Of a DNA stretch of 64,000 nt, positions 50,621 to 64,000 are shown in pieces; positions within the stretch are counted from its first letter, which is position 1; every line of letters begins with the position of its first letter. Source of the stretch: Macrostomum lignano (taxonomy: Eukaryota). The notes below the pieces were generated by a model that ran no database searches, had not been told where the DNA came from, and worked only from the letters and a program-made list of their open reading frames with translations. The position numbers and the translations under genes were made by a program. The DNA lies in NCBI GenBank assembly GCA_002269645.1, contig NIVC01001670.1, positions 124,001 through 188,000 of the forward strand, written 5' to 3'.

Positions 50621-51519
50621 TCGGTTCCCAATCCAAATAGGCTGCTCCAGAGCTCCCTGACTTACTCATCAGCCGGGAACTAGGATTCGGGAAGAAGGGA
50701 CACAACGAAAGGGGAGTCGCAGGCGCACCGGGGAGGAAATTAACTTATTTGGCCCGGCCACCTGGCAGCAGGTTGCATCAGAGACTCAAAAAGCTTCTTA
50801 AACGGACAGTGAAACCTTGAAATTAATCAAAAAATACACCCAGAAAGCTGCACTATTTAGGATTCGTTTTCCTAAGAGGCGAGGCAAGACAGCGACGCGC
50901 AATTATAAATTTCAAATTCCAATCTATTTATTTAGTTATAAGCAGCAAAGAACAATTCTGACAGACAAGAGTGAGACAATATTGCTACTACTAAATATAT
51001 TACAGAATTTCTTCTCTATAGAAATATTTTGGTGCATAGCTCGTAGTGAAACGTCCAATAAGTAAATATGATTCTAACTGCACTACTGCTACGAGTAGTA
51101 GGACAGTTCGAGAGCCCATCAACTAAATGAAACACTGTAATTTAATAAAGAAGGGCTAATATTCACAGAGACCCAAACCCCCTGGGGTGAACATCTTTGG
51201 CCCAGGTCTCAGAAATACATTTAAAACACTGATGGGCCCACAGATACTAAAATAACAGGATATATCACTCGCAAAAGTGCGATCATTTACAATATATATA
51301 TATATATATATATATATGTTTTTTGAAGCTGCAACAGTCGCCACTGGCTTTCTACAATCAGACACGTTAAACTGGGATATTCATCCTGTTTTGCCGACTC
51401 TAGACTGAAGATTACAGAAGAACTTGAAAAAAACCTAATCCAGTGCGTGCATAGCGAGCAATCGAGAAAAGTGGTAGCGCCCCAGCCAGGCCGATAATGT
51501 TTGGCTTTCCTCTTGCCGG

Positions 51520-51880
51520 CTTGCGCCTGACTTTGACCTCTTTCCTTACTGCTCTCTCATTGGCTGAGCTAGATTGGGCCTGCCCCTGGCTGGGTTTCGT
51601 CCGTCTGACTTTGACCTCTTTCCTTACTGCTCTCTCATTGGCTGAGCTAGATTGGGCCTGCCCCTGGCTGGGTTTCGTCCGTCTGACTTTGACCTCTTTC
51701 CTTACTGCTCTCTCATTGGCTGAGCTAGATTGGGCCTGCCCCTGGCTGGGTTTCGTCCGTCTGACTTTGACCTCTTTCCTTACTGCTCTCTCATTGGCTG
51801 AGCTAGATTGGGCCTGCCCTAGGCTGGGTTTCGTCCGTCTGAATTTGAACTCTCTCCTTACTGCTCTCTCATTGGCTGAG
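51520..51880. repeat. 78-bp tandem repeat, about 4.5 copies
   Basis: Direct reading; 26-aa period in ORFs on both strands. Confidence 0.95.
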
Positions 51881-52468
51881 TTTCGATCGCTTGTGTACAT
51901 CGAGTTACATGCTTGTTGTTCATTCTTAACCCCGTATGCTCTTGAGGCCATAAACCCGGAAGAGAGGAAAGGAAATTTTAGCTACCACAATAACGTTAAG
52001 AGTGATACTGCGTTTAAAAAAAGAGCAGACGCTCTAACTCTCACAACTGTAATTGCGGATGACATTTAGTTACTCTATCTACTAAGCATCTGTGAAATAT
52101 ATTGGCCTTTCTCCTTGTGCGACTCTATTGGCTCATTTATCCGCCTCTTAACCCATCCAACACGACCGCGTCTTCCAATAGTGAACCCCTCTACCCCCAT
52201 TTTATTGCCTTCCTCAGCTATGTACATTGAGTGACGCTAGCCAATTTACATTATGACTGGCAGGCCTAGCCTACAATATTATTTCACTTTACTAGCGCAA
52301 GCAACCGAATTGCCTTTTTTCATCCAAATCAAACAATAATTCTGTCGTGGCATAAAAATTTAGAAATTCATGCGCACTCATATGCCCAAAAGAAAGTAGA
52401 CTGATTGCATTTTGCAAATAAAATTTAACAAACGACCTAACTAGTGTTTCTACTAACTAAGGCTCAAG

Positions 52469-52799
52469 TTAATCATCCAGTCCCAGCTGCAGCAGATCCG
52501 AGCCCACTATTGGCGGTGTCGGTGCAGCCGCTGCAGCCGCCGGGGAGGCCGACACGGGCCCAGACAGTCCCAGCAGGGGATTCTCCATGCCGACAGTCAC
52601 GGAGCCCAACAGGGCGGCAGCTTCGGCGTGGTCGAATCGTCTGGAATCGACGGTCAGACCAAGGCGGACCAGCGGCGGCTCCGGACTGTCGCTGCTGACG
52701 CTCGCTGACGGAGTGCCGACAGTCAGCAGCAGGGGGGCCTCCGGATGCAGCACAAAGTGGGCGAACTGAACGGCCGGCTGGTCGGAGAGGTCGCACACT
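52469..52799 (-). CDS. PDHX: PDHX-like last exon, C-terminal non-catalytic core
   Basis: Acceptor attcag, phase 2. LLLTVG...LGLTVDSRRFD..A..L..V...MENP; DSR replaces the catalytic DHR, as in PDHX. Confidence 0.85.
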
Positions 52800-52927
52800 C
52801 TGAATTTTTATGAAACGCGTTCGATTTTTCATTAAACCTACTAACAGTAGTTTGCAAAAACAGTAAACTAATTTTTTAAATGGTTAACGAAGAAAAAATC
52901 TTTAACAATGAATCTAGTCAATGTATG

Positions 52928-53470
52928 GGAATTGCTGAGATTCAGTGGCTCAAGGGGGAATTGCTGAGATTCAGTGGCTCAAAGGGGAATTGCTGAGATT
53001 CAGTGGCTCAAGGGGGAGTTGCTGAGATTCAGTGGCTCAAAGGGGGAATTGCTGAGATTCAGTGGCTCAAAGGGGGAATTGCTGAGATTCAGTGGCTCAA
53101 ATGGGGAGTTGCTGAGATTCAGTGGCTCAAGGGGGAGTTGCTGAGATTCAGTGGCTCAAGGGGGAATTGCTGAGATTCAATGGCTCAAGGGGGAATTGCT
53201 GAGATTCAGTGGCTCCAGGGGGAATTGCTGAGATTCAGTGGCTCAAAGGGGGAATTGCTGAGATTCAGTGGCTCAAGGGGGAGTTGCTGAGATTCAGTGG
53301 CTCAAGGGGGAATTGCTGAGATTCAGCGGCTCAAAGGAGGAATTGCTGAGATTCAGTGGCTCAAGGGGGAATTGCTGAGATTCAGTGGCTCAAGGGGGAA
53401 TTGCTGAGATTCAGTGGCTCAAAGGGGGAATTGCTGAGATTCAGTGGCTCAAAGGGGGAGTTGCTGAGTT
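52928..53470. repeat. 29-30-bp minisatellite (ggggaattgctgagattcagtggctcaa)n filling the PDHX intron
   Basis: Direct reading; about 540 of the 759 intron nt. Confidence 0.96.
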
Positions 53471-53558
53471 CAATGCCTTTTGGCCCGAGACTAACTGTAA
53501 TAAAAGCATCTGTCATGACTCATGCGATAAACAGCTCGGAGATCGCATGCCAACTCAC

Positions 53559-54582
53559 ACAGCCGCTAGCGGGCCGGAGTCGCTGCTGGCAACCACCGCC
53601 TCTGCCAGGCGCCTGTCAATCTCGCGCAGGCCCATCGCTTGGGCGCGCGGCAGCCGGACTAGTCTGGGCAGAGCCGGCGCCGCCAGCAGCAGGGCGCCAA
53701 TGTTCACCGGATCGCCCCCGGAGCCACCGCCGGACAGCGCGCTGGCCAGGGCGCGCACAGCCAGGGCGACAATCGAGGAGGGGGCGCCGGAGGCGGGCAG
53801 ACGCGGCCTGCAGGAGGCGGTGGCGTAGGCGTGCGGCGCGGCCGACTTGATGGCCGCCTGGAGGGCCGCCCAGTCGCGCAGGCCGGGCGCCACGGGATGG
53901 TCCAGGTAGCCCGGCTGGGTCCGCGGCTCCAGGGGCCGCATCGACGGCCGGCTGGCGGAGTCAGCGGCGGGGGCGCCGGGGACAGCGGCGGGGGCGGCGG
54001 GGACAGCGGCAGGGGTGGCGGGGACAGCGGCAACCCCTGCAGACGGGGCGGAAGCGGCAGCAGCTACGGCAGCAGGCGGAGCGGATTTGACCTGGGCGAG
54101 AACGTCTGACTTCAGCAGGGTGCCGTGCGGCCCGGTGGCGCGCAGGTCGGCAGGGGTCAGGCGATGCAGCCGAATGAGCAGCTGGGCGGCCGGGCCGATG
54201 CGGCGAGGCGGCGAGGCTGTTGACGATGGTGGCGGCGTCGACGATGTTGAAGGCGAAGTTGAAGGCGGGGCAGCGGCAGAGGGCGGCTTATCGGCTGCAG
54301 TGGCCAGCTTGGCGGCCTCTGAAGCCACGGCTTGCCAGTCCTCGCCGGGGTCGGCCATAATGGCGATGACGTCGCCAACTGAGCCGGCGGAGCCGTCGGC
54401 GCGGAGCACCCGGGCCAGGACGCCTTCGTCGTCAAATTCGAAGGACACGACCGCCTTGTCGGTTTGAATGTCGCACAGAATGTCGCCGGGCTGCACCGTA
54501 TCGCCCTCGGCTTTGTGCCACTTCACAATGGTGCCCTCGGACATTGTGGGAGACAGGGAGGGCATGCGCACGCTGGTGGAGT
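53559..54582 (-). CDS. PDHX: Pyruvate dehydrogenase complex E3-binding protein (protein X): lipoyl domain, subunit-binding domain, start of core
   Basis: MPSLSPTMSEGTIVKW...IQTDKA (lipoyl Lys); GPAA..L...ATGPHGTLLKSDVL; PHAYATASC matches PDHX PHAYATADC. Acceptor gcacag (phase 1), donor gt|GTGAGT at 53558 (phase 2). Confidence 0.9.
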
Positions 54583-55659
54583 CTGTGCAGTTGGGGGGGG
54601 GGGCGGAGTAGCGGATTGTTAGAATTTGTGAGGGCGAGGCTGTTACAGAGTTCGAGTCTGATTTCTATTTGGTTGCATCATATCCTACTGGCACCTTTTT
54701 GGACCAAGTGGCTTTGCAGTATGCTTATGCTAGTTGTGTTCAATTCCATTGCAGAGGCCATGGCAAGGCAAAGTTACCCCACTACTTTCTGCATCGCAAG
54801 AAAAACATCTTCTAACACATATAGCATACAACACAATGTAGCATATTGAGACATCTGGCACTAGCATCAAGCTAGTAGGTACACTACTTATTCTTTCTAT
54901 TAACTTAAAAAAAGCATTTATAGATCTAGGAAATATGTTTTATAAAATTTTAAAATAAAGAGGACATTTAAACTACACTAAACACTAGAGATCATATAGG
55001 ATCATTTTGAGGATTAGGAATTTATCTTTACCGCTACTAAGACCTAATAGATTTATTAAAGACTTAGTGAAGGTTACATTTTTTGTTTCTTTATTAAAAA
55101 CCAACAAAAATGTCTTAAAAAAAATATTAGCCAAAATAAATCATAAATAATATAACCAAGGCAAGAAATTTCCTTATTTTGCTTTAGAACTAATATTTTA
55201 TCTAAATAAAAGCCAATCCCTTCTTTACTTTTTCAATATTGGACTAAAATTTACCAATTTATAAGTTTCTAAGTAGAGCTAAGTGAGCAACATAGATTAA
55301 AATTTTTTTTTTAAATTGCAAAAATGTAACATTTTCCTAGTATAGACTTTAGTAATTGTTCTTAATTTATTGTAACTGTATTGTATATACTTTTAAATAA
55401 TAAACTACAAACTAAGATTAGATATGGCTACTAAAGTTAAAATTGGATTGCTTATCAAAAAGCATAGACATCAAAATGTCAAATTTCTAATAGATGTCTA
55501 CACAATCCTAATAAATATTGAACTTGTTTTAATATTGAGAAAATAGCTTAGCATTTTAATGATTCAAATTAAGCTATTTTTACTAAATCTTAAGTATGAG
55601 GGTCAGTCAAAAAGTAATGATAATTTTGTTCTCACGAGTGTCAAACTTTAAATGGAAAT

Positions 55660-56878
55660 CTACTTTTCAACATAGTCCCCCTCAAGGGTCAGGCACTTCT
55701 CCATGCAGTATTGCCATCTCTCCGGGCTGTTTGCGTAGAACTCAGGAGGCTGTGCAGCAAGCCACTGTACAGTAGCCTTTTTGGCAGCCTCTTTGTCCTC
55801 ATCTTGGACTCCTTTGATTGCTTCCTTCAGCTTGGGAAGCAAAAAAAGTCCAAAAGAGCCAAACCAGGGCTATATGGAGGATGCTGGAGGATTTCCCAGC
55901 AGAAATCTTGCAGGGCTTCATGGCAGAACCAAGAAGTGTGAGCTGGTGCATTGTCATGGTGAAAGAGAATCCCAAGGTGCAACTTGCCATGTTGCTTTTT
56001 GGCCAGTTTGGTGTGGAGCTTTTACAGAAGCGACTCATAATAGGTGGCATTGATGATCTTCTGGCTTTCCAAGAAGTCCACCATCACCACTCATTCAACA
56101 TCCCAGAGAATTGTTGCCAAGACTCATAATAGGTGGCATTGATGATCTTCTGGCTTTCTAAGAAGTCCACCATCACCACTCATTCAACATCCCAGAGAAT
56201 TGTTGCCAAGACTCATAATAGGTGGCATTGATGATCTTCTGGCTTTCCAAGAAGTCCACCATCACCACTCATTCAACATCCCAGAGAATTGTTGCCAAGA
56301 CCATTCCGCATGGAACTTCTTGGGGCCTGCTGAATCTTGTGGCAGCCACTCCTTGGAATGGACCTTGGACTCGGGATTGTACTGAAATATTCATGTTTCA
56401 TCCTTGGTCACTAAGCGCTGGTAACTGTTTTCTGAATCAGCGTCCAAGCGGTTCAGCAGGTTGATGGTGCACTCAGTGCACTGAACCCAGTGTTCAGGCC
56501 GCAACAGCCGCAGGACCCAGCAAGCACTCAGCTTGCTCAGACCAAGATAGTCGATCACAATGGAGTGAGCACTGCCATGGGAAATGCCCACTTTGTCAGC
56601 AATATTGTCTATGGTCACGCGCCGATCCAGCTCAATCACTGGCTACATAGCTACCACATTTTTTCCCCTGTGCGCAATTTTGTGGGCCTTCCTGACTGCT
56701 AGGCATCTTCTGTGGACTCTCAGCCTTCCTTAAAAGCCTGAATCCAGCAGTAAATGGTTGGATCTAGTGGAGCAATGTCCCTATAGACCTTCAAAGCGTC
56801 AATGATTTTGGCTGGCTTCCAACCAAGCTATACAAGAAATGTCACATCATTACAAGCTTTGATTTTTGAATTTTCCAT
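55660..56878 (-). pseudogene. Mariner transposase pseudogene
   Basis: Stops and frameshifts split it across ORFs 56391-56639, 55799-56050 and 55660-55842; the third catalytic Asp reads Gly; 89-bp segment triplicated at 56032-56298. Confidence 0.92.
56032..56298. repeat. 3 x 89-bp tandem triplication inside the mariner transposase
   Basis: Copies start at 56032, 56121 and 56210. Confidence 0.95.
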
Positions 56879-56941
56879 TGTTTAAAGGGTATACTATGGT
56901 TAGAGTGTCACCATGCAGGCATCAATCACTTTAGAACAGGG

Positions 56942-58329
56942 CCATAGTCAGGAAGGTGGCAAGTGCATGCGGGAATCAATTTATGGAAAAATCCTTGGTG
57001 CACACCAATGTACGCCAATTTTTTAAAACCCTTAACATGATGTTTCTGTTGCACGCCAAAAATCTTGAATACCAAAAATCATGTACGCCTCATGTACGTG
57101 TGATTTGAATATTAACCGTATCAAGGACGACTTAAGTAGAAGGACGGGAAACCTCGTTTCTTAGAAAAGTTTTGAAGGCACTTTTTCCCGAAAAAATACA
57201 CTACGGAGATAGGAAGTTTTCATTTTTTCAGCACAAAAATTGTTATTGCGTTTGATAGGAGGCAGATCCAGTGTTTATCTTTTAATATGTTGTGCCTTTT
57301 TATTGCTCTATCAATATTTATAAAGCTTTTCGTTCAAAAAATTAGGATTCTATGTTAATTTTTTATTCTACATATATTTCCTGTATCTAAAAATCACAAA
57401 AATGCATAACACAGCTCCAATATTTGGTTTTATGAACCTATTTTATCATCTCTGTTACAAATATTTGCTACACAGTCGGGTAAGAATGATAAAAAAGACT
57501 CATGAAGCTAAAGAGCCGAGCTGTGGCGTTCTAATGTATTTCAAGCACAAGACACGCGAAAATATACATAGAATAAAAAATTACCATAGAATCCTAATTT
57601 TCTGAACAAAAAGCTTTATAAATATCGATAGAGCAATAAAAAAGGCAAAACATATCAAAAGATGAACACTGGATCTGCCTCCTATCAAACGCAATAACAA
57701 TTTTTGTGCTGAAAAAATGAAAACTTCCTATCTCCGTAGTGTATTTTTCGGGAAAAAGTGCCTTCAAAACTTTTCTAAGAAACGAGGTTTCCCGTCCTTC
57801 TACTTAAGTCGTCCTTGAACCGTATTAGATACTATTTTTAAATAAATTTTCTACTTACGTTAAACAAAGTTTATATAAAAAAGGAAATTCGCTACAAAGA
57901 ACATAGTGAGTATCAAAAACTTTTTCTTCACATTTCAAGAAACAAATAAACTAAAAGTCTACAAGAGTCACAAAATAAGAGCATTTAAAAGTTATTGGAT
58001 ATTTTAATTTTAATGTAGGCTGTAGAGTGTAGGCCTGGCTGTAGGCTAGGCTGTAGCCTCAACTAGTTGGTTTAATCAATATTCAAATTCAATTGTTCAC
58101 GTTTAACTTTATATATTGTATATAGTGTATACATCTATATCTGACTTGTTGATATACTGTCAGTTTGTAATTGCACGCCAAGGTTACATGTCAAGTAAAA
58201 AACTTGTACGCTGAAAATTTAGGCGTGGCTTGAGACCCCTATTTGCACGCCAATTTTGCACGCCAAAATTTTAGCGTGGCTTGTGCATGCGGGAAAATTC
58301 TCACGTGCAGGCTACCTTCCTGAGTATGG
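56942..58329. mobile_element. Non-autonomous TIR element with CC..GG ends, inserted into the hAT left TIR
   Basis: TIRs ccatagtcaggaaggtggc / ccatactcaggaaggtagc (17/19 identical); 8-bp TSD GAACAGGG (56934-56941 and 58330-58337); repeated subterminal TGCACGCCAA-like motifs at both ends. Confidence 0.85.
57122..57817. mobile_element. Foldback/MITE with about 258-bp TIRs (CAAGG ends), innermost nested element
   Basis: Arms about 57122-57379 and 57559-57817 are near-perfect reverse complements; 8-bp TSD AACCGTAT (57114-57121 and 57818-57825). Confidence 0.92.
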
Positions 58330-58639
58330 GAACAGGGTCGGCAAACTTTTTATCTGTGCAGGCCGGATTGAATTCTGGGACAGTACCACGGGCCAGAGAA
58401 AGAACTAATTTCTTGTTTTCTTTATCCACATTCAAAGTTCAGTGAAAATTGATTGAAAATGATGTTTTATTAAGTATCTATATTGTTTATTTATTAAATG
58501 ATAGCAAGAACAAGCACACAAAAATGAAAATTATGCACTAGTCTAATGACATACATTGAATGCAGTACAACTTACTTAATGCATCATCGAAAAAGTTCAT
58601 TTTCCACATAATTTGACTGAAAATTAGGACTACATGTAA

Positions 58640-58850
58640 GTCAATGAGATTGATGGTGCTAGTGCTTGCGGATGAGGGACTCCAAGTTGGGAGCCAGAGA
58701 AGTGGAAGCCAGCAATAGCACGGTGTTAAGATTGTCATCAGTCAGCTAAGTGCGCAGGCGGCTCTTGTCTTGGCATACTTCATTTTGCTAAACAGCTGCT
58801 CGCAAATATATGTGCTACCAAAGATAGCAACTACACTGCAAACATGAGCA
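58640..58850 (-). pseudogene. hAT transposase C-terminal dimerisation-domain remnant
   Basis: FGSTYICEQLFSKMKYAK, then after a frameshift KSRLRT*LTDDNL..LLASTSLAPNLESLI..HQSH, a Charlie/SPIN/GTF2IRD2-type C-terminus. Confidence 0.85.
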
Positions 58851-59230
58851 GAGAGGACTAGAAAAAGCTCTCTGTCCAAATGTGCACACAAACCCTTCCT
58901 CTCCCCTATCCTTCTGTGGAAGAGTACAGTAGGGCCTTCTCTCTCCCACAGCCCTTTTACCCTCCCTTCATTCTTCTGCCCTTGGTTGGGCCTTGCTTGG
59001 GTAGTGAGTATGGAGTTTGTGAAATCTGTTTGTGGGCCATATTAACATTAAGGAATAGCAAAGGGAAATGGGCCAGATAAGGAATCCTTGCAGGCCAGAT
59101 TTGGCCCGCGGGAGTTTGCCGACCCCTGCTTTAGAAGAACCAAAACTCTGTCAAAAAAGATCAAAAGATGTTTTTTTCAAATGAAACCAGTTGCAGTTCA
59201 ATAACTCTAATTTTTTAGGTTAGGCGGTAC

Positions 59231-59453
59231 CAGGTTTTTCTTTTTCGCCAGAGACAAGGTGCAAAATTGCACCCTATGCTCACTTTCATGGTGCAATTTC
59301 TCTTTTTTCTTATTTTAAGGCAGTGCGAATGAGGCTTAAATAGAAAAATAGGTTATGAGACTGCACCTAAACCGTACCAACATTTCAATTTCAAGGTGCA
59401 ATTTTAAAATTTAAGGTGCATACGCACACTTTACGCACAAAAAATAAACCCAG
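59231..59453. mobile_element. Small hAT-like MITE abutting the inner edge of the mariner TIR
   Basis: 8-bp TSD GGCGGTAC (59223-59230 and 59454-59461); imperfect ends CAGGTTTT / CTGGGTTT; internal inverted AAGGTGCA motifs. Confidence 0.65.
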
Positions 59454-61261
59454 GGCGGTACAACAAAATTATCATTACTTTTTGACTGACCCTCATATTG
59501 TAGAATTTTAATTTAAATATACTTAAAATATTTCCAAGAGAAAACTTGCAAAAACATGACTCTTACTTAGTCTTAAGTCTTATTATCAATGGACAATGAG
59601 TAGATATGAGACAACCAACCGACAGCTATAGGAGTCAACATATTTCTATTAATAATACCATTGAAGTAAAAAACGAACTGTTAAAATGTTTACAAACTTA
59701 TTTTAACTTACAACGATATTGAGGAGTCTTATTGTATTCAGTATAAGTGAGACCAATTTGTTTGAGAAGTTGCTTTTGATGGAGATGGCAATGCCATTGG
59801 ATTGGTATTTGGTTTGATTTATGAAGCCGACAACACAAACTCTTGAATATAGGGCTCGCTTTTCCTCGAATAGTTATAAACGATATCATTTTATTAGTAG
59901 CTATTACTTTCACCAAACTAGTGTTTGCACTAATACGATAGTTAGCTTAACTTAAAGTATTTATATTTTCTTGATTCAGTTCCTCGAAAATTCCGAGTTA
60001 AGATGTTGCAGTTAAAAAGGAATAAACAAAGGGTTTGCTTGTAAGAGATAAAAATACGATTACACTCGGTTTTAGAAAAAATTAACTGACTAATCTTTAA
60101 AATCAGGAAAAACTTGCGAATAAATATAACGTTTTAATTTCAAGATAAAATTCTAGCAAGTTCCTGAGTTAAGATGAAGGAATTAAATTTTTCGGCTTGG
60201 AATCATTTAAACCTTAATTCGACAATTGCGGTAGACAGTTTCATTTTTTTCAAAACATTTCGAAAAGTATATTTAAGGCTTTAAGGCCCAATAAGCAAAA
60301 AAGAGTCATCATATCGCACGATTGATATATAATGCAATGAAAAATATATGTACTAGCCGTGTAATCAAGAAAATGTTGCCATACGTACTGGAGTGGCGGC
60401 CGGGTATGAACGTTGCTTAACATTTCTTGATGCAGATTACATTGTATAGTTTACAGGTTCATTTAGTCCTATCTAGCACATATTTTTACATGTTTTCCGG
60501 GCGTGTCTTTTAAGCTTTCGTGTGATGTACGGTACCGTATATTGTTGCATTGGTCTGGCCCAGTGGCTCCATGTTCAATTCTCTCATTATCTTGACTTTC
60601 ATAAAGTGAATCTGATGTTTACAATAACGTAATAATAATAATGCCTTACTCAATTGAAGGTACAAATACTTATCTAGATACATATCGTAGCGCTATGCTG
60701 CTATGCTGTCTCTCTCCTTATCCTCGCTCTTGTTGGGCCGGTGGATCAAGCCGGGTTTGGGGGGCTATGGCCTTGGCCTACGCTCCCCGCCCGTTATAAA
60801 AGCTACATGTAGGACCAATCTTAACTTATAAGAGATAAAAAACCGTGCAAGAGTGCACATGCAGAGCATGCAAGCAATTAAATGCTAATTGACAGGACTT
60901 CAAACCTGCCAAAAAGTTTTCTGCTTTTATTCAAATAATTTTGAAACTGCTGTCAATGAAGACTGTTTGTTAAAGATAATGGAAGCACCGGAAGTAGAAA
61001 AGCCGCGTTAATATTGCATGCAGTAGAGCTGACAGATTCATTTTTAATGGTAAATCAAATAAAAAAAGCATTTTCCCACTACGACATGAATAGAACAATC
61101 TAATGGTTTCGATTGTAATTTACATGCAACACAGCGACCAATCAAACGGGAAAAGTTAGTTATGAATGCATCTATATTGCATTGTAAACTGGTAAAATAC
61201 CGAGCCCACTTGGGAAGAGCCAATGTGGGAGAGCTTATGTAGGAAAGACCTGTCATCAATT

Positions 61262-61915
61262 TTAGCGACTGGCCTCTCCGTTGCTACTCGACACTGGCCG
61301 AGGGGTTGCCAGGTGCCGCGCCACGGCCTCCTCGCCGAGGGCGGCCAGCTGGCCGGGCGAGCAGCAGTCGTCCAGCCAGTCCAGGACGCCGTCCAGCAGG
61401 CTGCCGCAGTCGGCGGTGGCGCCCAGCCGGCTAGCAAAGGAGCCGGCCAGATGGTCCGCGACGTGCCGGAAGACGGCCAGCTTGGCAGCGTCCGCGCTCG
61501 CTCCGGCGGCTGACTGGCCGCCGTCTCGGCTGACCCGGCGCTGATAAACTCGATTGATGAGGCGCGCAGCTTCCGTCTGTTTGCGCAGGGCGGCCAGCTG
61601 TCTATCGAGCTGATCGCGCTGGCGCATCAGCGCCTCAAAGTGGCTGATGGCCGCCTGAAGGGTGGCCGCCCGGCTCGCCCGCCCAGCCGGAGACAAAGGC
61701 GCCTCTCCAGAGCCGAAGGCCGGCTCCTCGGCGCTGCTGCCGCCAGTCAGGGCGGCCAATTCGGCGTAGGCGGCCTTGATGGAGTTGCGACGGCGCTGCT
61801 CCGACTGCGAGTGGGCGCGACGCTTCTGCAGGTCGTCGGGGCTGCCGCCACCGCCCCCGCCGCCGCCGCCGCAGCCGTGTGTCTCCGGCTGCTGCTGCGA
61901 CTGCGACTTGCGACT
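61262..61915 (-). CDS. MLX: Max-like protein X (MLX/Bigmax): bHLH-ZIP plus DCD domain; 5' exon not located
   Basis: RRAHSQSEQRRRNSIKAAY basic region (H/E/R intact), SRAATLQAAISHF, a zipper, and KLAVFRHVADHL..SF...WLDDCC DCD resembling MLX KFNVFQGIMDSLFQSF..WIEEHC. Acceptor cacttcag, phase 0. Confidence 0.9.
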   Translation of the reverse strand, partial: SRKSQSQQQPETHGCGGGGGGGGGSPDDLQKRRAHSQSEQRRRNSIKAAYAELAALTGGSSAEEPAFGSGEAPLSPAGRASRAATLQAAISHFEALMRQRDQLDRQLAALRKQTEAARLINRVYQRRVSRDGGQSAAGASADAAKLAVFRHVADHLAGSFASRLGATADCGSLLDGVLDWLDDCCSPGQLAALGEEAVARHLATPRPVSSSNGEASR

Positions 61916-63142
61916 CTGAAGTGCAAGAAGGGAAGTCAGCTCGGAGGGACTCTCAAGTGGTATAAAGTACATCCAAATCCAACTGGTACTAACATGATCT
62001 GTTTCTGTCCCTGTAGACCAAAATGCTATATTTCGACCATTAAAATTTTTCCCGCCGTGCAAGCTTTTAGCGCTACAATTCTATACTTTCTACTTATCAG
62101 TAGATGATCTCTACAACTCCCTAAATTTATTTTCTACCCTAAACCTAAATTATTGTGCAATCTAATATAGAAACAGAAAAAAACCTTAAGTGGGCAGGTG
62201 TGCAGCCAACGGCACAGCCGCTGTGATTGTGTACTGTTAGGGGGAGGCGCTACCCTATCACAGAGAGACAAACTAGTTCAACAGCGCACTAACCGCAGCC
62301 AACAGCATAGAAAATAAATAAAATTCACAGTCTAGGATGCCCTCTTCGACAACTGCATAAAAATGATGAAATACATTTGCTTATTATATTTCCGAATGAT
62401 TGGAACGCAGCTAAAGCAATATAAAGCATCAGTGAAAAAAAGAAGCTTTCTTGAATAGATGGCCGAACATAGCCATTTATATTACTAATGTAAGTAGTGT
62501 GACTCAATTATTTCTTAGATAAATATGTCCGCAGAAGTGCAATTGAGCGCTCACAGCAGGTGCTCAAACTGGTGCTCAAATTAGCACTCAGAATCGATGG
62601 GAAAAATTGCCTAGAAAAGCAGCTAAGGCAACGCCAGACACTGTGAAGCATTTAAAACTAGTAATCCAAGAGCCAGAGTTTTTAGCACAATGGACCCGCA
62701 TCTGACTACTGTAACTAGTAGGAGTGAAGAGCAGAGATTAAAACCAACAAAAGACTGCAGTGAAAGTCTGCTATTAAAAAAGTAAGAATAAAACATATTG
62801 TAAGAAAATAGGAGTTAAACTCAAGAGTAAGATTCTCATTGGATTCTTTGAGACAGAGCAGAGCAGAGCAAAATAATAATATAATTAGTTCCAAGAATGA
62901 ATAGCAAACACATTGCACTATTGACAATGCCTAACTCTCTACTGAAACTGTCTTTTAAGCAGTATATAAGTAATATAGAGCAGTTTGAACCAGTATACAG
63001 AAATCTATGGAATACTCACTCCAAGCTCTACCTCCAGTCTGTTCCAACCAAAATTGTACTAGTGAATGAAGACGCTGTCGTCTTCAAAGGTGGGACGATG
63101 GTTTATATATTGTGTTTTTATCCTTTTATGGCTATGACATAT

Positions 63143-64000
63143 GCCCCTGGCATTAGTTAGTCTAGTGGTCTAGTGGGGGCTGGCCGCCCCCACGCCCCTG
63201 GCATTAGTTAGTCTAGTGGTATAGTGGGGGGCTGGCCGCCCCCACGCCCCTGGCATTAGTTAGTCTAGTGGTATAGTGGGGGCTCGCCGCCCCCACGCCC
63301 CTGGCATTAGTTAGTCTAGTGGTATAGTGGGGGCTGGCCGCCCCCCACGCCCCTGGCATTAGTTAGTCTAGTGGTATAGTGGGGGGCTGGCCGCCCCCAC
63401 GCCCCTGGCATTAGTTAGTCTAGTGGTATAGTGGGGGGCTGGCCGCCCCCCACGCCCCTGGCATTAGTTAGTCTAGTGGTATAGTGGGGGGCTGGCCGCC
63501 CCCACGCCCCTGGCATTAGTTAGTCTAGTGGTATAGTGGGGGGCTGGCCGCCCCCACGCTCCTGGCATTAGTTAGTCTAGTGGTATAGTGGGGGGCTGGC
63601 CGCCCCCACGCCCCTGGCATTAGTTAGTCTAGTGGTATAGTGGGGGCTGGCCGCCCCCACGCCCCTGGCATTAGTTAGTCTAGTGGTATAGTGGGGGGCT
63701 GGCCGCCCCCCACGCCCCTGGCATTAGTTAGTCTAGTGGTATAGTGGGGGCTAGCCGCCCCCCACGCCCCTGGCATTAGTTCTTCTAGTGGTACGCTCGT
63801 ATAGTGGGGGGGGGCTTGCCGCCCCCCACGCCCCTGGCATTAGTTAGTCTAGTGGTATAGTGGGGGGCTGGCCGCCCCCCACGCCCCTGGCATTAGTTAG
63901 TCTAGTGGTGTAGTGGGGGCTGGCCGCCCCCCACGCCCCTGGCATTAGTTAGTCTAGTGGTATAGTGGGGGGCTGGCCGCCCCCACGCCCCTGGCATTAG
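63143..64000. repeat. 52-53-bp hairpin-containing minisatellite, running off the right edge
   Basis: Unit gcccctggcattagttagtctagtggtatagtggggg(g)ctggccgccccc(c)ac; each copy has an 8-bp GC stem. Confidence 0.96.

What the first reader, a model, noticed from the sequence alone, without database searches (positions are those of the whole stretch)
55597..59495. Four-level nest of DNA transposons, fully reconstructable
Seen: mariner (TA TSD, 34-bp TIRs) contains a Charlie-type hAT (TSD CTTTAGAA), whose left TIR was hit by a CC..GG element (TSD GAACAGGG), which contains a long-TIR foldback (TSD AACCGTAT). A fifth MITE (TSD GGCGGTAC) sits beside the mariner TIR. Subtracting the guests with one TSD copy each (2200 + 231 bp) and two extra 89-bp copies (178 bp) from 3899 bp leaves 1290 bp, the canonical mariner size. 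Both direct insertions into the mariner landed in its roughly 186-bp 5' leader. Inference: this leader, or TIR ends generally, is an insertion hotspot shared by unrelated transposases, and the nest fixes the relative activity order of several families.
Basis: partly seen in the sequence, partly recalled or inferred. Interest (0 to 1): 0.8.

Follow-up and report, generated by a model that had tools for sequence, protein, structure and literature searches.

The report
Nested DNA transposons in flatworm intron
This is a real but ordinary pile-up of cut-and-paste transposons: a dead mariner carrying four smaller elements, three of them stacked inside one another, in the first intron of a Macrostomum lignano gene and missing from the duplicated copies of that gene in the same genome.

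Summary
A mariner (55597-59495, TA duplication, perfect 34-bp terminal repeats) holds a Charlie/Buster-type hAT deletion derivative. That hAT holds a 684-bp element, which holds a 696-bp foldback. A 223-bp element sits just inside the mariner's terminal repeat. Each guest has an exact 8-bp target duplication. Removing the guests and two extra 89-bp copies leaves 1290 bp, which aligns end to end with intact 1300-1303-bp relatives.

The window is Macrostomum lignano assembly Mlig_3_7, contig NIVC01001670.1. The nest lies in intron 1 of a PDHX-like gene. Two 95-98% identical homeologous contigs lack the whole nest, so an empty site exists for the outermost level. The mariner reading frame has 5 stops and 3 frameshifts, so it was probably dead when it arrived.

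The hotspot inference rests on two insertions (p about 0.02, post hoc). "Unrelated transposases" is not shown, because all four guests make 8-bp duplications. The nest fixes the order of these insertion events only, not of family activity, and it may have been built elsewhere and moved as one mariner-bounded unit. Nesting of this kind is well known. Interest is low.

The parts
55597..59495 (-). Outermost element: a dead DD34D mariner copy with all its cargo (3899 bp; 1290 bp of its own sequence once the 89-bp tandem is collapsed). The transposase runs on the minus strand.
   Evidence: TA on both sides and 34/34 terminal repeats. Pfam PF01359, E = 1.1e-12. 68% identical to the intact 351-aa P0001. 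Absent from homeologs L003, L006 and L007.
55595..55596 (.). Left copy of the mariner TA target duplication. The right copy is at 59496-59497.
55597..55630 (.). Mariner terminal inverted repeat at the 3' end of the transposase gene. Its partner is at 59462-59495.
   Evidence: 34/34 complementary. Homologous to the termini of L001 and L002.
55660..56878 (-). Decayed mariner transposase reading frame.
   Evidence: 5 stop codons and 3 frameshifts in the stitched translation. Frame-breaking indels of +2, -13 and -1 nt, plus an in-frame -3, relative to intact relatives. tblastn with P0001.
56032..56301 (.). Tandem triplication of an 89-bp piece of the transposase gene. It adds 178 bp.
   Evidence: A single copy aligns to the intact relatives, with a 13-bp deletion at its edge.
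56937..59128 (-). E2: a non-autonomous Charlie/Buster-type hAT. Its own sequence (56937-56941 plus 58338-59128) is 796 bp. 8-bp duplication CTTTAGAA at 56929-56936 and 59129-59136.
   Evidence: The two termini match 14/15 with one indel. Termini CAGGG(G)TCGGCAAAC are about the same as those of the full-length element in L008.
58644..58969 (-). Remnant of the hAT transposase C-terminus (last ~97 codons, one frameshift) inside E2.
   Evidence: tblastn with P0243 residues 534-630, E = 1.8e-19. P0243 has FAM200/ZBED5/GTF2IRD2-like domains. Related proteins are named GTF2IRD2B-like and EPM2AIP1-like. The Pfam hAT dimerisation domain scores only E = 0.14.
56942..58329 (.). E3: a 684-bp non-coding element (own sequence 56942-57121 plus 57826-58329), inserted 5 nt inside the E2 terminus. 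8-bp duplication GAACAGGG at 56934-56941 and 58330-58337. Terminal repeats CCATAGTCAGGAAGGTGGC match 17/19.
   Evidence: Seven ACGCC subterminal motifs against 0.4 expected.
57122..57817 (.). E4: a 696-bp foldback element with arms of ~330 nt. 8-bp duplication AACCGTAT at 57114-57121 and 57818-57825.
   Evidence: Arms 100%, 95% and 93% complementary in three segments. Scan hit against 0.03 by chance. Folds into one long hairpin, -438 kcal/mol.
59231..59453 (.). E5: a 223-bp non-coding insertion directly inside the mariner's 34-bp terminal repeat. 8-bp duplication GGCGGTAC at 59223-59230 and 59454-59461. Its terminal repeats are weak.
   Evidence: The leader of the intact relatives is continuous over this site. 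Terminal repeat 11/15, at chance level. Six GGTGCA/TGCACC motifs.
59713..59889 (-). Exon 1 of the host gene (PDHX / E3-binding-protein-like, a paralogue of BOX15_Mlig031052). The nest lies in the intron that follows.
   Evidence: tblastn with P0121 residues 1-59. Gene model L004 12024-19444 corresponds to window 59889-52469.
53555..54571 (-). Large GC-rich exon of the same host gene (lipoyl and E3-binding domains).
   Evidence: (97% identical to P0121).

Best explanation
This is a genuine nest of class II (cut-and-paste) transposons in intron 1 of a PDHX-like gene of Macrostomum lignano.

The outermost unit is a non-autonomous, already decayed DD34D mariner. A mariner transposase supplied by another copy inserted it at a TA dinucleotide. 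Its 5' untranslated leader carries two guests: E5 (223 bp) and E2 (a 796-bp deletion derivative of a Charlie/Buster-type hAT). E3 (684 bp) later split the E2 terminus after its fifth base, which should have immobilised E2. E4 (a 696-bp foldback) then landed in E3. Each guest insertion duplicated 8 bp of target. An 89-bp piece of the dead transposase gene was also triplicated.

Shown:
- every boundary, every duplication and the order of the insertion events;
- the identities of the mariner and of E2;
- the absence of the whole nest from the homeologous copies of the locus.

Inferred:
- the mariner was dead on arrival;
- E3, E4 and E5 are hAT-like MITEs;
- no special hotspot is needed, because nesting in non-functional transposon DNA inside an intron is the usual neutral outcome in a repeat-rich genome.

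Not resolved: whether the guests entered at this locus or travelled in with the mariner.
For: - Boundaries and duplications are exact. The combination of duplication and terminal repeat is far above chance for E3 and E4.
- The rebuilt 1290-bp mariner aligns end to end with the intact elements L001 (1303 bp) and L002 (1300 bp). Both have TA duplications and start codons at nt 184 and 182, against 187 here. There is no gap at either guest site.
- Pfam Transposase_1. 626 homologues, the best 68% identical over 100% of the query. The D-34-D spacing is readable in HHDNAPAHT...LLD.
- E2's termini are restored by removing E3 and match the termini of a full-length 630-aa hAT element.
- Host and locus: the window is 100% identical to NIVC01001670.1. 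Homeologs NIVC01001256.1 and NIVC01005034.1 join window 55593 directly to 59495.
- M. lignano carries three subgenomes with about 2% SNP divergence and 32-36% divergence once long insertions are counted (PMC10733133). More than half the genome is repeats (PMC5730564). Such insertion differences are therefore routine.
Against: - No second copy of E3, E4 or E5 was found, so their mobility rests on structure alone. This covers the 64-kb window, about 25 kb of homeolog and two JGI metagenome scans.
- E5's terminal repeats are no better than chance.
- The empty site in the homeologs is not clean. It has 3 mismatches and 1 indel within 17 bp of the insertion point, so which state is ancestral is not proven.
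- Five transposon insertions into one 1.3-3.9-kb spot, against none elsewhere in the ~14 kb of aligned window flank, is unlikely under uniform targeting. By my rough calculation it is of order 1e-3 to 1e-4. That favours either a preference for nesting or arrival as a composite.
Confidence: 0.88

Rival explanations
1. Composite move. The nest was built up elsewhere in the genome during a long residence of the dead mariner. The whole 3.9-kb unit, bounded by intact mariner ends, was then mobilised here in one step by a mariner transposase, carrying the hAT-type elements as cargo.
For: - The whole nest is missing from homeologs that are 95-98% identical in the flanks.
- The mariner ends are 34/34 identical although the gene has 5 stops, 3 frameshifts and a triplication. 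The copy was therefore mobilised long after it died.
- Every guest spares the 34-bp terminal repeats.
- Four further hits into one small target since subgenome divergence are improbable under uniform targeting (my estimate).
Against: - No second copy of the composite was seen, and the genome could not be searched.
- By my recollection mariner transposition efficiency falls with element length. I did not check this against the literature.
- M. lignano homeologs differ by very many long insertions (32-36%, PMC10733133), so repeated local hits are less surprising than in most genomes.
- All guest duplications are still perfect, which fits young insertions made in place.
Confidence: 0.3
2. The mariner 5' leader, or transposon ends in general, is a preferred target that draws insertions by several different transposases.
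For: - Both direct guests of the mariner lie in the 186-nt leader (p = 0.015-0.02).
- All four guests lie closer to an end of their host than a uniform model predicts (Fisher combined p = 0.014).
- The leader is 33% GC against 48% GC for the gene.
Against: - The sample is 2, or 4 counting all guests, and the pattern was noticed first and tested afterwards.
- All guests make 8-bp duplications, so they may share one kind of transposase rather than being unrelated.
- The duplicated sequences share no motif (CTTTAGAA, GGCGGTAC, GAACAGGG, AACCGTAT).
- AT-richness or plain chance explains the pattern as well.
- No other mariner copy was available for a test.
Confidence: 0.12
3. The nest, or at least the mariner, predates the split of the subgenomes and was lost from the other homeologs by transposase-mediated excision or by deletion. 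The nest then had much longer to build up in place.
For: The 'empty' site in L003 and L007 differs from the window flanks at 4 positions within 17 bp of the insertion point. That is denser than the 3-5% seen in the adjacent flanks, as if the site had been repaired.
Against: - By my recollection, a typical mariner footprint keeps both TA copies plus a few element bases, about +5 bp. The homeolog site is only 1 bp longer than a clean empty site.
- The surrounding AT-rich intron is generally diverged and rich in indels (88.9% identity in the 100 bp to the left).
Confidence: 0.12
4. Assembly artefact or chance resemblance. The segments are not separate mobile units but a chimeric join in a difficult PacBio assembly.
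For: 36% of the Mlig_3_7 assembly length is in scaffolds that are chimeric between subgenomes (PMC10733133). REAPR rated only 64% of bases error-free (PMC5730564).
Against: - Five independent pairs of exact target duplications sit exactly at terminal-repeat boundaries.
- Removing each inner element restores the host element's sequence, checked against elements from other organisms.
- Misassembly does not produce such structures.
Confidence: 0.02

Closest known systems
Nested transposon insertions used for relative dating (transposition-in-transposition / TinT, PMC3014933; by recollection also the 'defragmentation' studies of mammalian repeats and the analysis of nested maize and rice MITEs)
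   Same: An inner element bounded by its own target duplication must have inserted after its host element. Stacks of several levels are routine in repeat-rich genomes.
   Different: Those methods use thousands of nests to order family activity. This is a single locus. It also involves cut-and-paste elements, whose composite could itself have moved.
Mariner (DD34D) elements of the Tc1/mariner superfamily. The nearest sequences are the intact 351-aa transposases P0001 (ENA metagenome, L001) and P0005 (GCA_013332775.1, L002).
   Same: TA duplication, terminal repeats of about 30 bp beginning (T/C)GAGGG..AGTCAAAAAGTAAT, length of about 1.3 kb, a leader of about 185 nt, and a single transposase gene with Pfam PF01359 and D-34-D spacing.
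   Different: This copy is dead: 5 stops, 3 frameshifts, a conserved SPDL motif changed to SPGL, and an 89-bp triplication. It is only 64-71% identical in DNA to those relatives. No intact Macrostomum copy was seen.
Buster/Charlie-type hAT elements and their MITEs, for example Mar of Drosophila willistoni (PMC3517528)
   Same: 8-bp duplication fitting nnnTAnnn (CTT-TA-GAA), termini CAGGGGTCGGC like Mar's CAG(G/A)GGTAGGC, transposase related to the TFII-I / GTF2IRD2 group, and short internally deleted derivatives.
   Different: E2 keeps about 330 bp of the transposase 3' end, so it is a deletion derivative rather than a classic MITE. One of its termini is split by E3.
Foldback-type and long-terminal-repeat MITEs
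   Same: E4 is almost entirely two inverted arms of about 330 nt with a short loop and no coding capacity.
   Different: Its superfamily is unknown. The 8-bp duplication and CAAGG terminus fit hAT, but no transposase source was identified.
Composite transposons, or cargo carried between intact terminal repeats
   Same: Intact outer mariner ends enclose unrelated DNA, and the whole unit is present or absent as one block between homeologs.
   Different: Movement as a unit is not demonstrated. Only one copy is known.

Membership tests
Tc1/mariner superfamily, mariner (DD34D) family | TA target-site duplication | tested here: met
   TA at 55595-55596 and 59496-59497.
Tc1/mariner superfamily, mariner (DD34D) family | Terminal inverted repeats of about 30 bp and an element of about 1.3 kb | tested here: met
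   34/34 repeats. 1290 bp after removing the guests and the extra tandem copies. Intact relatives are 1300 and 1303 bp.
Tc1/mariner superfamily, mariner (DD34D) family | Transposase with the mariner catalytic domain and D,D(34)D spacing | tested here: met
   PF01359, E = 1.1e-12. 68% identity to a 351-aa homologue. 34 residues lie between the D of HHD and the D of LLD/PSD, read.
Tc1/mariner superfamily, mariner (DD34D) family | Intact reading frame (autonomous element) | tested here: not met
   5 stops, 3 frameshifts and a 178-bp tandem gain. This is a non-autonomous copy.
hAT superfamily, Buster/Charlie group (E2) | 8-bp target duplication; for Buster the consensus nnnTAnnn | tested here: met
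   CTTTAGAA at 56929 and 59129. Consensus taken from PMC3517528.
hAT superfamily, Buster/Charlie group (E2) | Short terminal inverted repeats beginning CAG..., shared with autonomous family members | tested here: met
   After removing E3 the two termini match 14/15 with one indel. The L008 element 453-2998 has CAGGGGTCGGCAACCT at both ends.
hAT superfamily, Buster/Charlie group (E2) | hAT transposase sequence (C-terminal dimerisation region) | tested here: met
   The remnant at 58644-58969 matches residues 534-630 of the 630-aa P0243, E = 1.8e-19. P0243 has FAM200/ZBED5/GTF2IRD2-like domains. Direct Pfam PF05699 on the remnant scores only E = 0.14, below the cut-off. Related hits P0267 and P0244 pass PF05699.
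hAT superfamily, Buster/Charlie group (E2) | Other copies in the same genome with different flanks | not testable with these tools
   The M. lignano genome cannot be searched by DNA here. No copy in the window or in L003.
hAT-type MITEs (E3, E4, E5) | 8-bp target duplication | tested here: met
   GAACAGGG, AACCGTAT and GGCGGTAC, each occurring only at its two sites in the 64 kb. By recollection an 8-bp duplication is not unique to hAT, so this does not prove the superfamily.
hAT-type MITEs (E3, E4, E5) | Significant terminal inverted repeats with a hAT-like terminus (recalled consensus YARNG) | tested here: inconclusive
   E4: 75/75 and CAAGG, which fits. E3: 17/19 but begins CCATA, which does not fit. 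E5: 11/15, at chance level, with CAGGT and CTGGG.
hAT-type MITEs (E3, E4, E5) | Multi-copy family with a matching autonomous partner | not testable with these tools
   No copies in about 90 kb of M. lignano sequence. The two JGI metagenome scans, one with the E4 terminus and one with the mariner terminus, found nothing. ORFs from the nest are absent from the protein collection.
   Only this copy is available. 2 of 2 guests in the leader gives p = 0.015-0.02; 4 of 4 near host ends gives p = 0.014. Both are post hoc.

The most novel reading that the evidence does not exclude
The 3.9-kb nest is a functioning composite. A dead mariner with perfect ends has carried three or four hAT-type non-autonomous elements into a new locus. 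These include one whose own terminus is destroyed and which can no longer move by itself. Elements of one superfamily would then spread by hitch-hiking on the transposase of another, during the recent burst of insertions that separates the M. lignano subgenomes.
Probability: 0.25. Interest if true: 0.35.

Novelty: new member of a known kind. Interest (0 to 1): 0.15.

Why it matters
Its value is mainly as annotation. It gives base-exact boundaries for five DNA-transposon units in Macrostomum lignano, a flatworm model whose repeats have only been annotated automatically (PMC5730564). It also gives a clean example of a transposon presence/absence difference between the S, L1 and L2 subgenomes, the kind of long insertion reported to dominate their divergence (PMC10733133). 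A dead mariner with perfect ends, absent from 95-98% identical homeologs, implies that a mariner transposase source was active recently, as was at least one hAT source. That is relevant to transgenesis work in this species. The nesting itself and the dating logic are textbook.

Tried and rejected
- **Other copies in the window:** blastn of the five excised units against the window found only self-hits. Against the homeolog L003 there was only a 44-bp weak hit.
- **Exact protein look-up:** ten ORFs from the nest were looked up in the 15-billion-protein collection. None is present, because repeat-overlapping transcripts were removed from the M. lignano annotation (PMC5730564).
- **Word-indexed protein search:** the stitched 77-aa hAT remnant found no candidate. 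The exhaustive representative search with the 49-aa ORF then did find hAT relatives.
- **JGI metagenome scans:** searches with the E4 terminus and the mariner terminus returned 0 matches.
- **Rfam and tRNA scans of 54500-61300:** nothing found, so E5 is not a tRNA-derived SINE.
- **E3 against the L003-specific 1.1-kb element:** no alignable similarity beyond the shared ACGCC motif, so the two cannot be called one family.
- **Host identity:** my first guesses from the GC-rich exons and AT-rich introns (a vertebrate such as lamprey, or an alga) were wrong. The flanking gene is 97% identical to a Macrostomum lignano protein, and the contig match is 100%.
- **Excision footprint in L003:** considered and judged unlikely, because the site is only 1 bp longer than a clean empty site.


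Full report

Yes.

| Unit | Coordinates | Target duplication |
|---|---|---|
| Mariner | 55597-59495 | TA at 55595-55596 and 59496-59497 |
| E2 (hAT) | 56937-59128 | CTTTAGAA at 56929 and 59129 |
| E3 | 56942-58329 | GAACAGGG at 56934 and 58330 |
| E4 (foldback) | 57122-57817 | AACCGTAT at 57114 and 57818 |
| E5 | 59231-59453 | GGCGGTAC at 59223 and 59454 |

- The mariner's two 34-nt ends are perfectly complementary.
- E3's target was three bases of mariner plus the first five bases of the E2 terminus.
- Three of the four 8-mers occur nowhere else in the 64 kb. CTTTAGAA occurs four times on the + strand.
- The 89-bp unit is present three times at 56032-56301.
- The arithmetic 3899 - 2200 - 231 - 178 = 1290 is correct.

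As a chance control I scanned the region for an exact 8-bp duplication with at least 11 of 14 matching terminal inverted bases. The scan finds E3 and E4, plus trivial palindromes inside the foldback. Locally shuffled sequence gives 0.03 hits per region. E5 passes only a loose threshold that chance also passes (2.7 hits per shuffle), so its terminal repeats prove nothing by themselves.

**2. Do the excisions restore real elements?**

The rebuilt mariner encodes, on the minus strand, a transposase with Pfam PF01359 (E = 1.1e-12). It has 626 homologues, and the best is 68% identical over its full length (P0001, 351 aa).

Two intact relatives were fetched as DNA:
- L001, from an ENA metagenome: 1303 bp, TA duplications, start codon at nt 184.
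- L002, from GCA_013332775.1: 1300 bp, TA duplications, start codon at nt 182.
- Both have termini CGAGGGG.AGTCAAAAAGTAAT.

The rebuilt element is 1290 bp with its start codon at nt 187. The three-way alignment runs without a gap across both guest sites. TTTTGTT|GTACC aligns with TTTTGCTGTACA at the E5 site, and TTTTGGTTC|TTCTAAAG aligns with TTTTGGCTTCCCCTAAG at the E2 site. One copy of the 89-bp unit aligns with the relatives, so the triplication is derived.

The reading frame is dead. It has 5 stops, frame-breaking indels of +2, -13 and -1 nt, and a conserved SPDL motif changed to SPGL. The D-34-D spacing is still readable.

Removing E3 with one copy of its duplication gives E2 the terminus CAGGGTCGGCAAAC. 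The other end of E2 reads CAGGGGTCGGCAAAC.

An exhaustive protein search with a 49-aa ORF from E2 found the 630-aa protein P0243. That protein carries FAM200/ZBED5/GTF2IRD2-like domains. tblastn aligns its last 97 residues to window 58969-58644 with one frameshift (E = 1.8e-19). Related hits are named GTF2IRD2B-like and EPM2AIP1-like, and two of them pass the hAT dimerisation model.

P0243's own element (L008 453-2998) ends in CAGGGGTCGGCAACCT on both sides. E2 is therefore an internally deleted Charlie/Buster-type hAT. Its duplication CTT-TA-GAA fits the Buster consensus nnnTAnnn, and its terminus resembles that of the Buster MITE Mar (PMC3517528).

E3, E4 and E5 are non-coding:
- E3 has 17/19 terminal repeats and seven ACGCC subterminal motifs, against 0.4 expected.
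- E4 is a foldback that forms one long hairpin.
- E5 has six GGTGCA/TGCACC motifs.
- None hits Rfam or a tRNA model.

**3. Where is this?**

The flanking ORF 53555-54571(-) is 97% identical to Macrostomum lignano BOX15_Mlig031052g1, a PDHX / E3-binding-protein-like protein. Looking up the neighbouring bHLH-zip protein (window 61262-61912, minus strand) returned contig NIVC01001670.1 of assembly Mlig_3_7. That contig is 100% identical to window 51262-64000.

Exon 1 of the PDHX-like gene is at 59713-59889 and the next exon starts near 54590. The nest therefore lies in intron 1, with the mariner gene on the same strand as the host gene.

**4. The empty site.**

Two other contigs of the same assembly carry the same gene pair at 95-98% identity. 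They are NIVC01001256.1 (L003, L005, L006) and NIVC01005034.1 (L007), and the two are 99.98% identical to each other. In both, window 55593 is joined directly to window 59495, so the entire nest is absent.

These contigs in turn carry a 1.1-kb element that the window lacks. It sits at the position equivalent to window 55493-55500, has terminal repeats CAGGATGGAATTCTTGC, and has nine ACGCC motifs.

M. lignano line DV1 holds three subgenomes. They differ by about 2% in SNPs, but by 32-36% when long insertions are counted (PMC10733133). A difference of this sort is therefore the norm.

The empty site is not perfectly clean. It reads CTTAAAATATAGTCGAA, against CTTAAG-TA-TTGTAGAA expected from the window flanks. 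That is 3 mismatches and 1 indel in 17 bp. It is only 1 bp longer than a clean site, so it does not look like a typical mariner footprint (recollection, not tested).

**5. How it most likely came about.**

*Shown.* The order of events is mariner copy, then E2, then E3, then E4, with E5 some time after the mariner. All four guest insertions made 8-bp duplications. The outer unit is an insertion relative to the homeologs.

*Inferred: the mariner was dead on arrival.*
- The homeologs differ by only a few percent. Five stops and three frameshifts imply roughly 3-10% decay by my estimate.
- The mariner was therefore already dead and was moved by a transposase made elsewhere.
- Its ends were kept perfect because only copies with good ends keep moving.

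*Inferred: the composite could still move.*
- E3's insertion 5 nt into the E2 terminus should have immobilised E2.
- No guest touches the mariner's 34-bp ends, so the whole composite remained mobilisable.

*Not resolved.* I cannot tell whether the guests entered here or rode in with the mariner. Four further hits into one spot of 1.3-3.9 kb, with none in about 14 kb of neighbouring window-specific flank, would be improbable under uniform targeting. That favours either a tendency to nest (neutral landing sites, AT-rich targets) or arrival as a composite. I give the composite reading about 0.25-0.3.

**6.

- *Hotspot.* Two of two guests in the leader gives p = 0.015-0.02. All four guests lie nearer a host end than uniform expectation (Fisher p = 0.014). 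Both patterns were seen first and tested afterwards, and no other mariner copy could be examined.
- *Unrelated transposases.* This is not shown. All guests make 8-bp duplications, and only E2 can be assigned to a family.
- *Fixing the activity order of families.* This needs genome-wide nesting counts (TinT, PMC3014933). One locus orders events only.

**7. Novelty and verdict.**

Multi-level nests of transposons and their use for relative dating are well established. The families are uncharacterised members of known superfamilies in a genome whose repeats were annotated automatically (PMC5730564). The finding is correct and careful, but ordinary.

The useful additions from this work are:
- the identity of the host and locus;
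- the empty site in the homeologs;
- the family assignment of E2;
- the dead-on-arrival mariner;
- the open question of whether the composite moved as a unit.

Nothing here required a referred step.

Noticed in passing
window 1-53500: 38 different minisatellite arrays (units of 4-95 bp, arrays of 0.25-1.5 kb, many strongly strand-skewed) make up 39% of the sequence. There is no dispersed repeat between them. The same arrays sit at the same places in the homeolog L003 with different copy numbers.
   Followed up: partly
window 53555-54571 and 61262-61930 versus 54600-61260: There is an extreme compositional contrast. The GC-rich exons lie in 1-kb windows of 56-63% GC and encode Ala/Pro/Gly-rich protein. 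They are embedded in intron and intergenic DNA of 29-35% GC.
   Followed up: no
L003 10508-11624 (equivalent to window 55493-55500): A 1.1-kb element with terminal repeats CAGGATGGAATTCTTGC and a duplication of about 8 bp (ATGTCTA) is present in both nest-free homeologs and absent from the window. It carries nine ACGCC subterminal motifs, the same motif that is enriched in E3.
   Followed up: partly
window 55590-55596 / 59496-59510 versus L003 10385-10410: The empty site in the homeologs differs from the window flanks by 3 mismatches and 1 indel within 17 bp of the insertion point. That is denser than in the nearby flanks. It is neither a clean pre-insertion site nor, as I recall them, a typical mariner footprint.
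   Followed up: partly
window 56032-56301: The 89-bp triplication inside the dead transposase gene lies directly next to a 13-bp deletion relative to intact relatives. The three copies differ by a single base, so the triplication is young.
   Followed up: partly
window 63143-64000 (continues in L004 to at least 5853): A 52-bp satellite (GCCCCTGGCATTAGTTAGTCTAGTGGTATAGTGGGGGGCTGGCCGCCCCCAC) runs off the end of the window. It continues for at least 2.9 kb in the source contig.
   Followed up: no
window 61262-61912 (-): This exon encodes a bHLH-leucine-zipper protein (RRRAHSQSEQRRRNSIK..., resembling Mlx/Max by my reading). The 216-aa product is identical in all three homeologous contigs, although the flanking DNA differs by 2-5%.
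   Followed up: no
L008 453-2998: A full-length Charlie/Buster-type hAT (630-aa intact transposase) lies in an ENA metagenome contig. It has clear terminal repeats but no matching 8-bp duplication (ATTTAAAC on one side, CCCTATGT on the other).
   Followed up: no
window 57122-57817: If transcribed within the host intron, the E4 foldback would form a hairpin of about 330 bp (predicted -438 kcal/mol). That would be a possible source of small RNAs.
   Followed up: no
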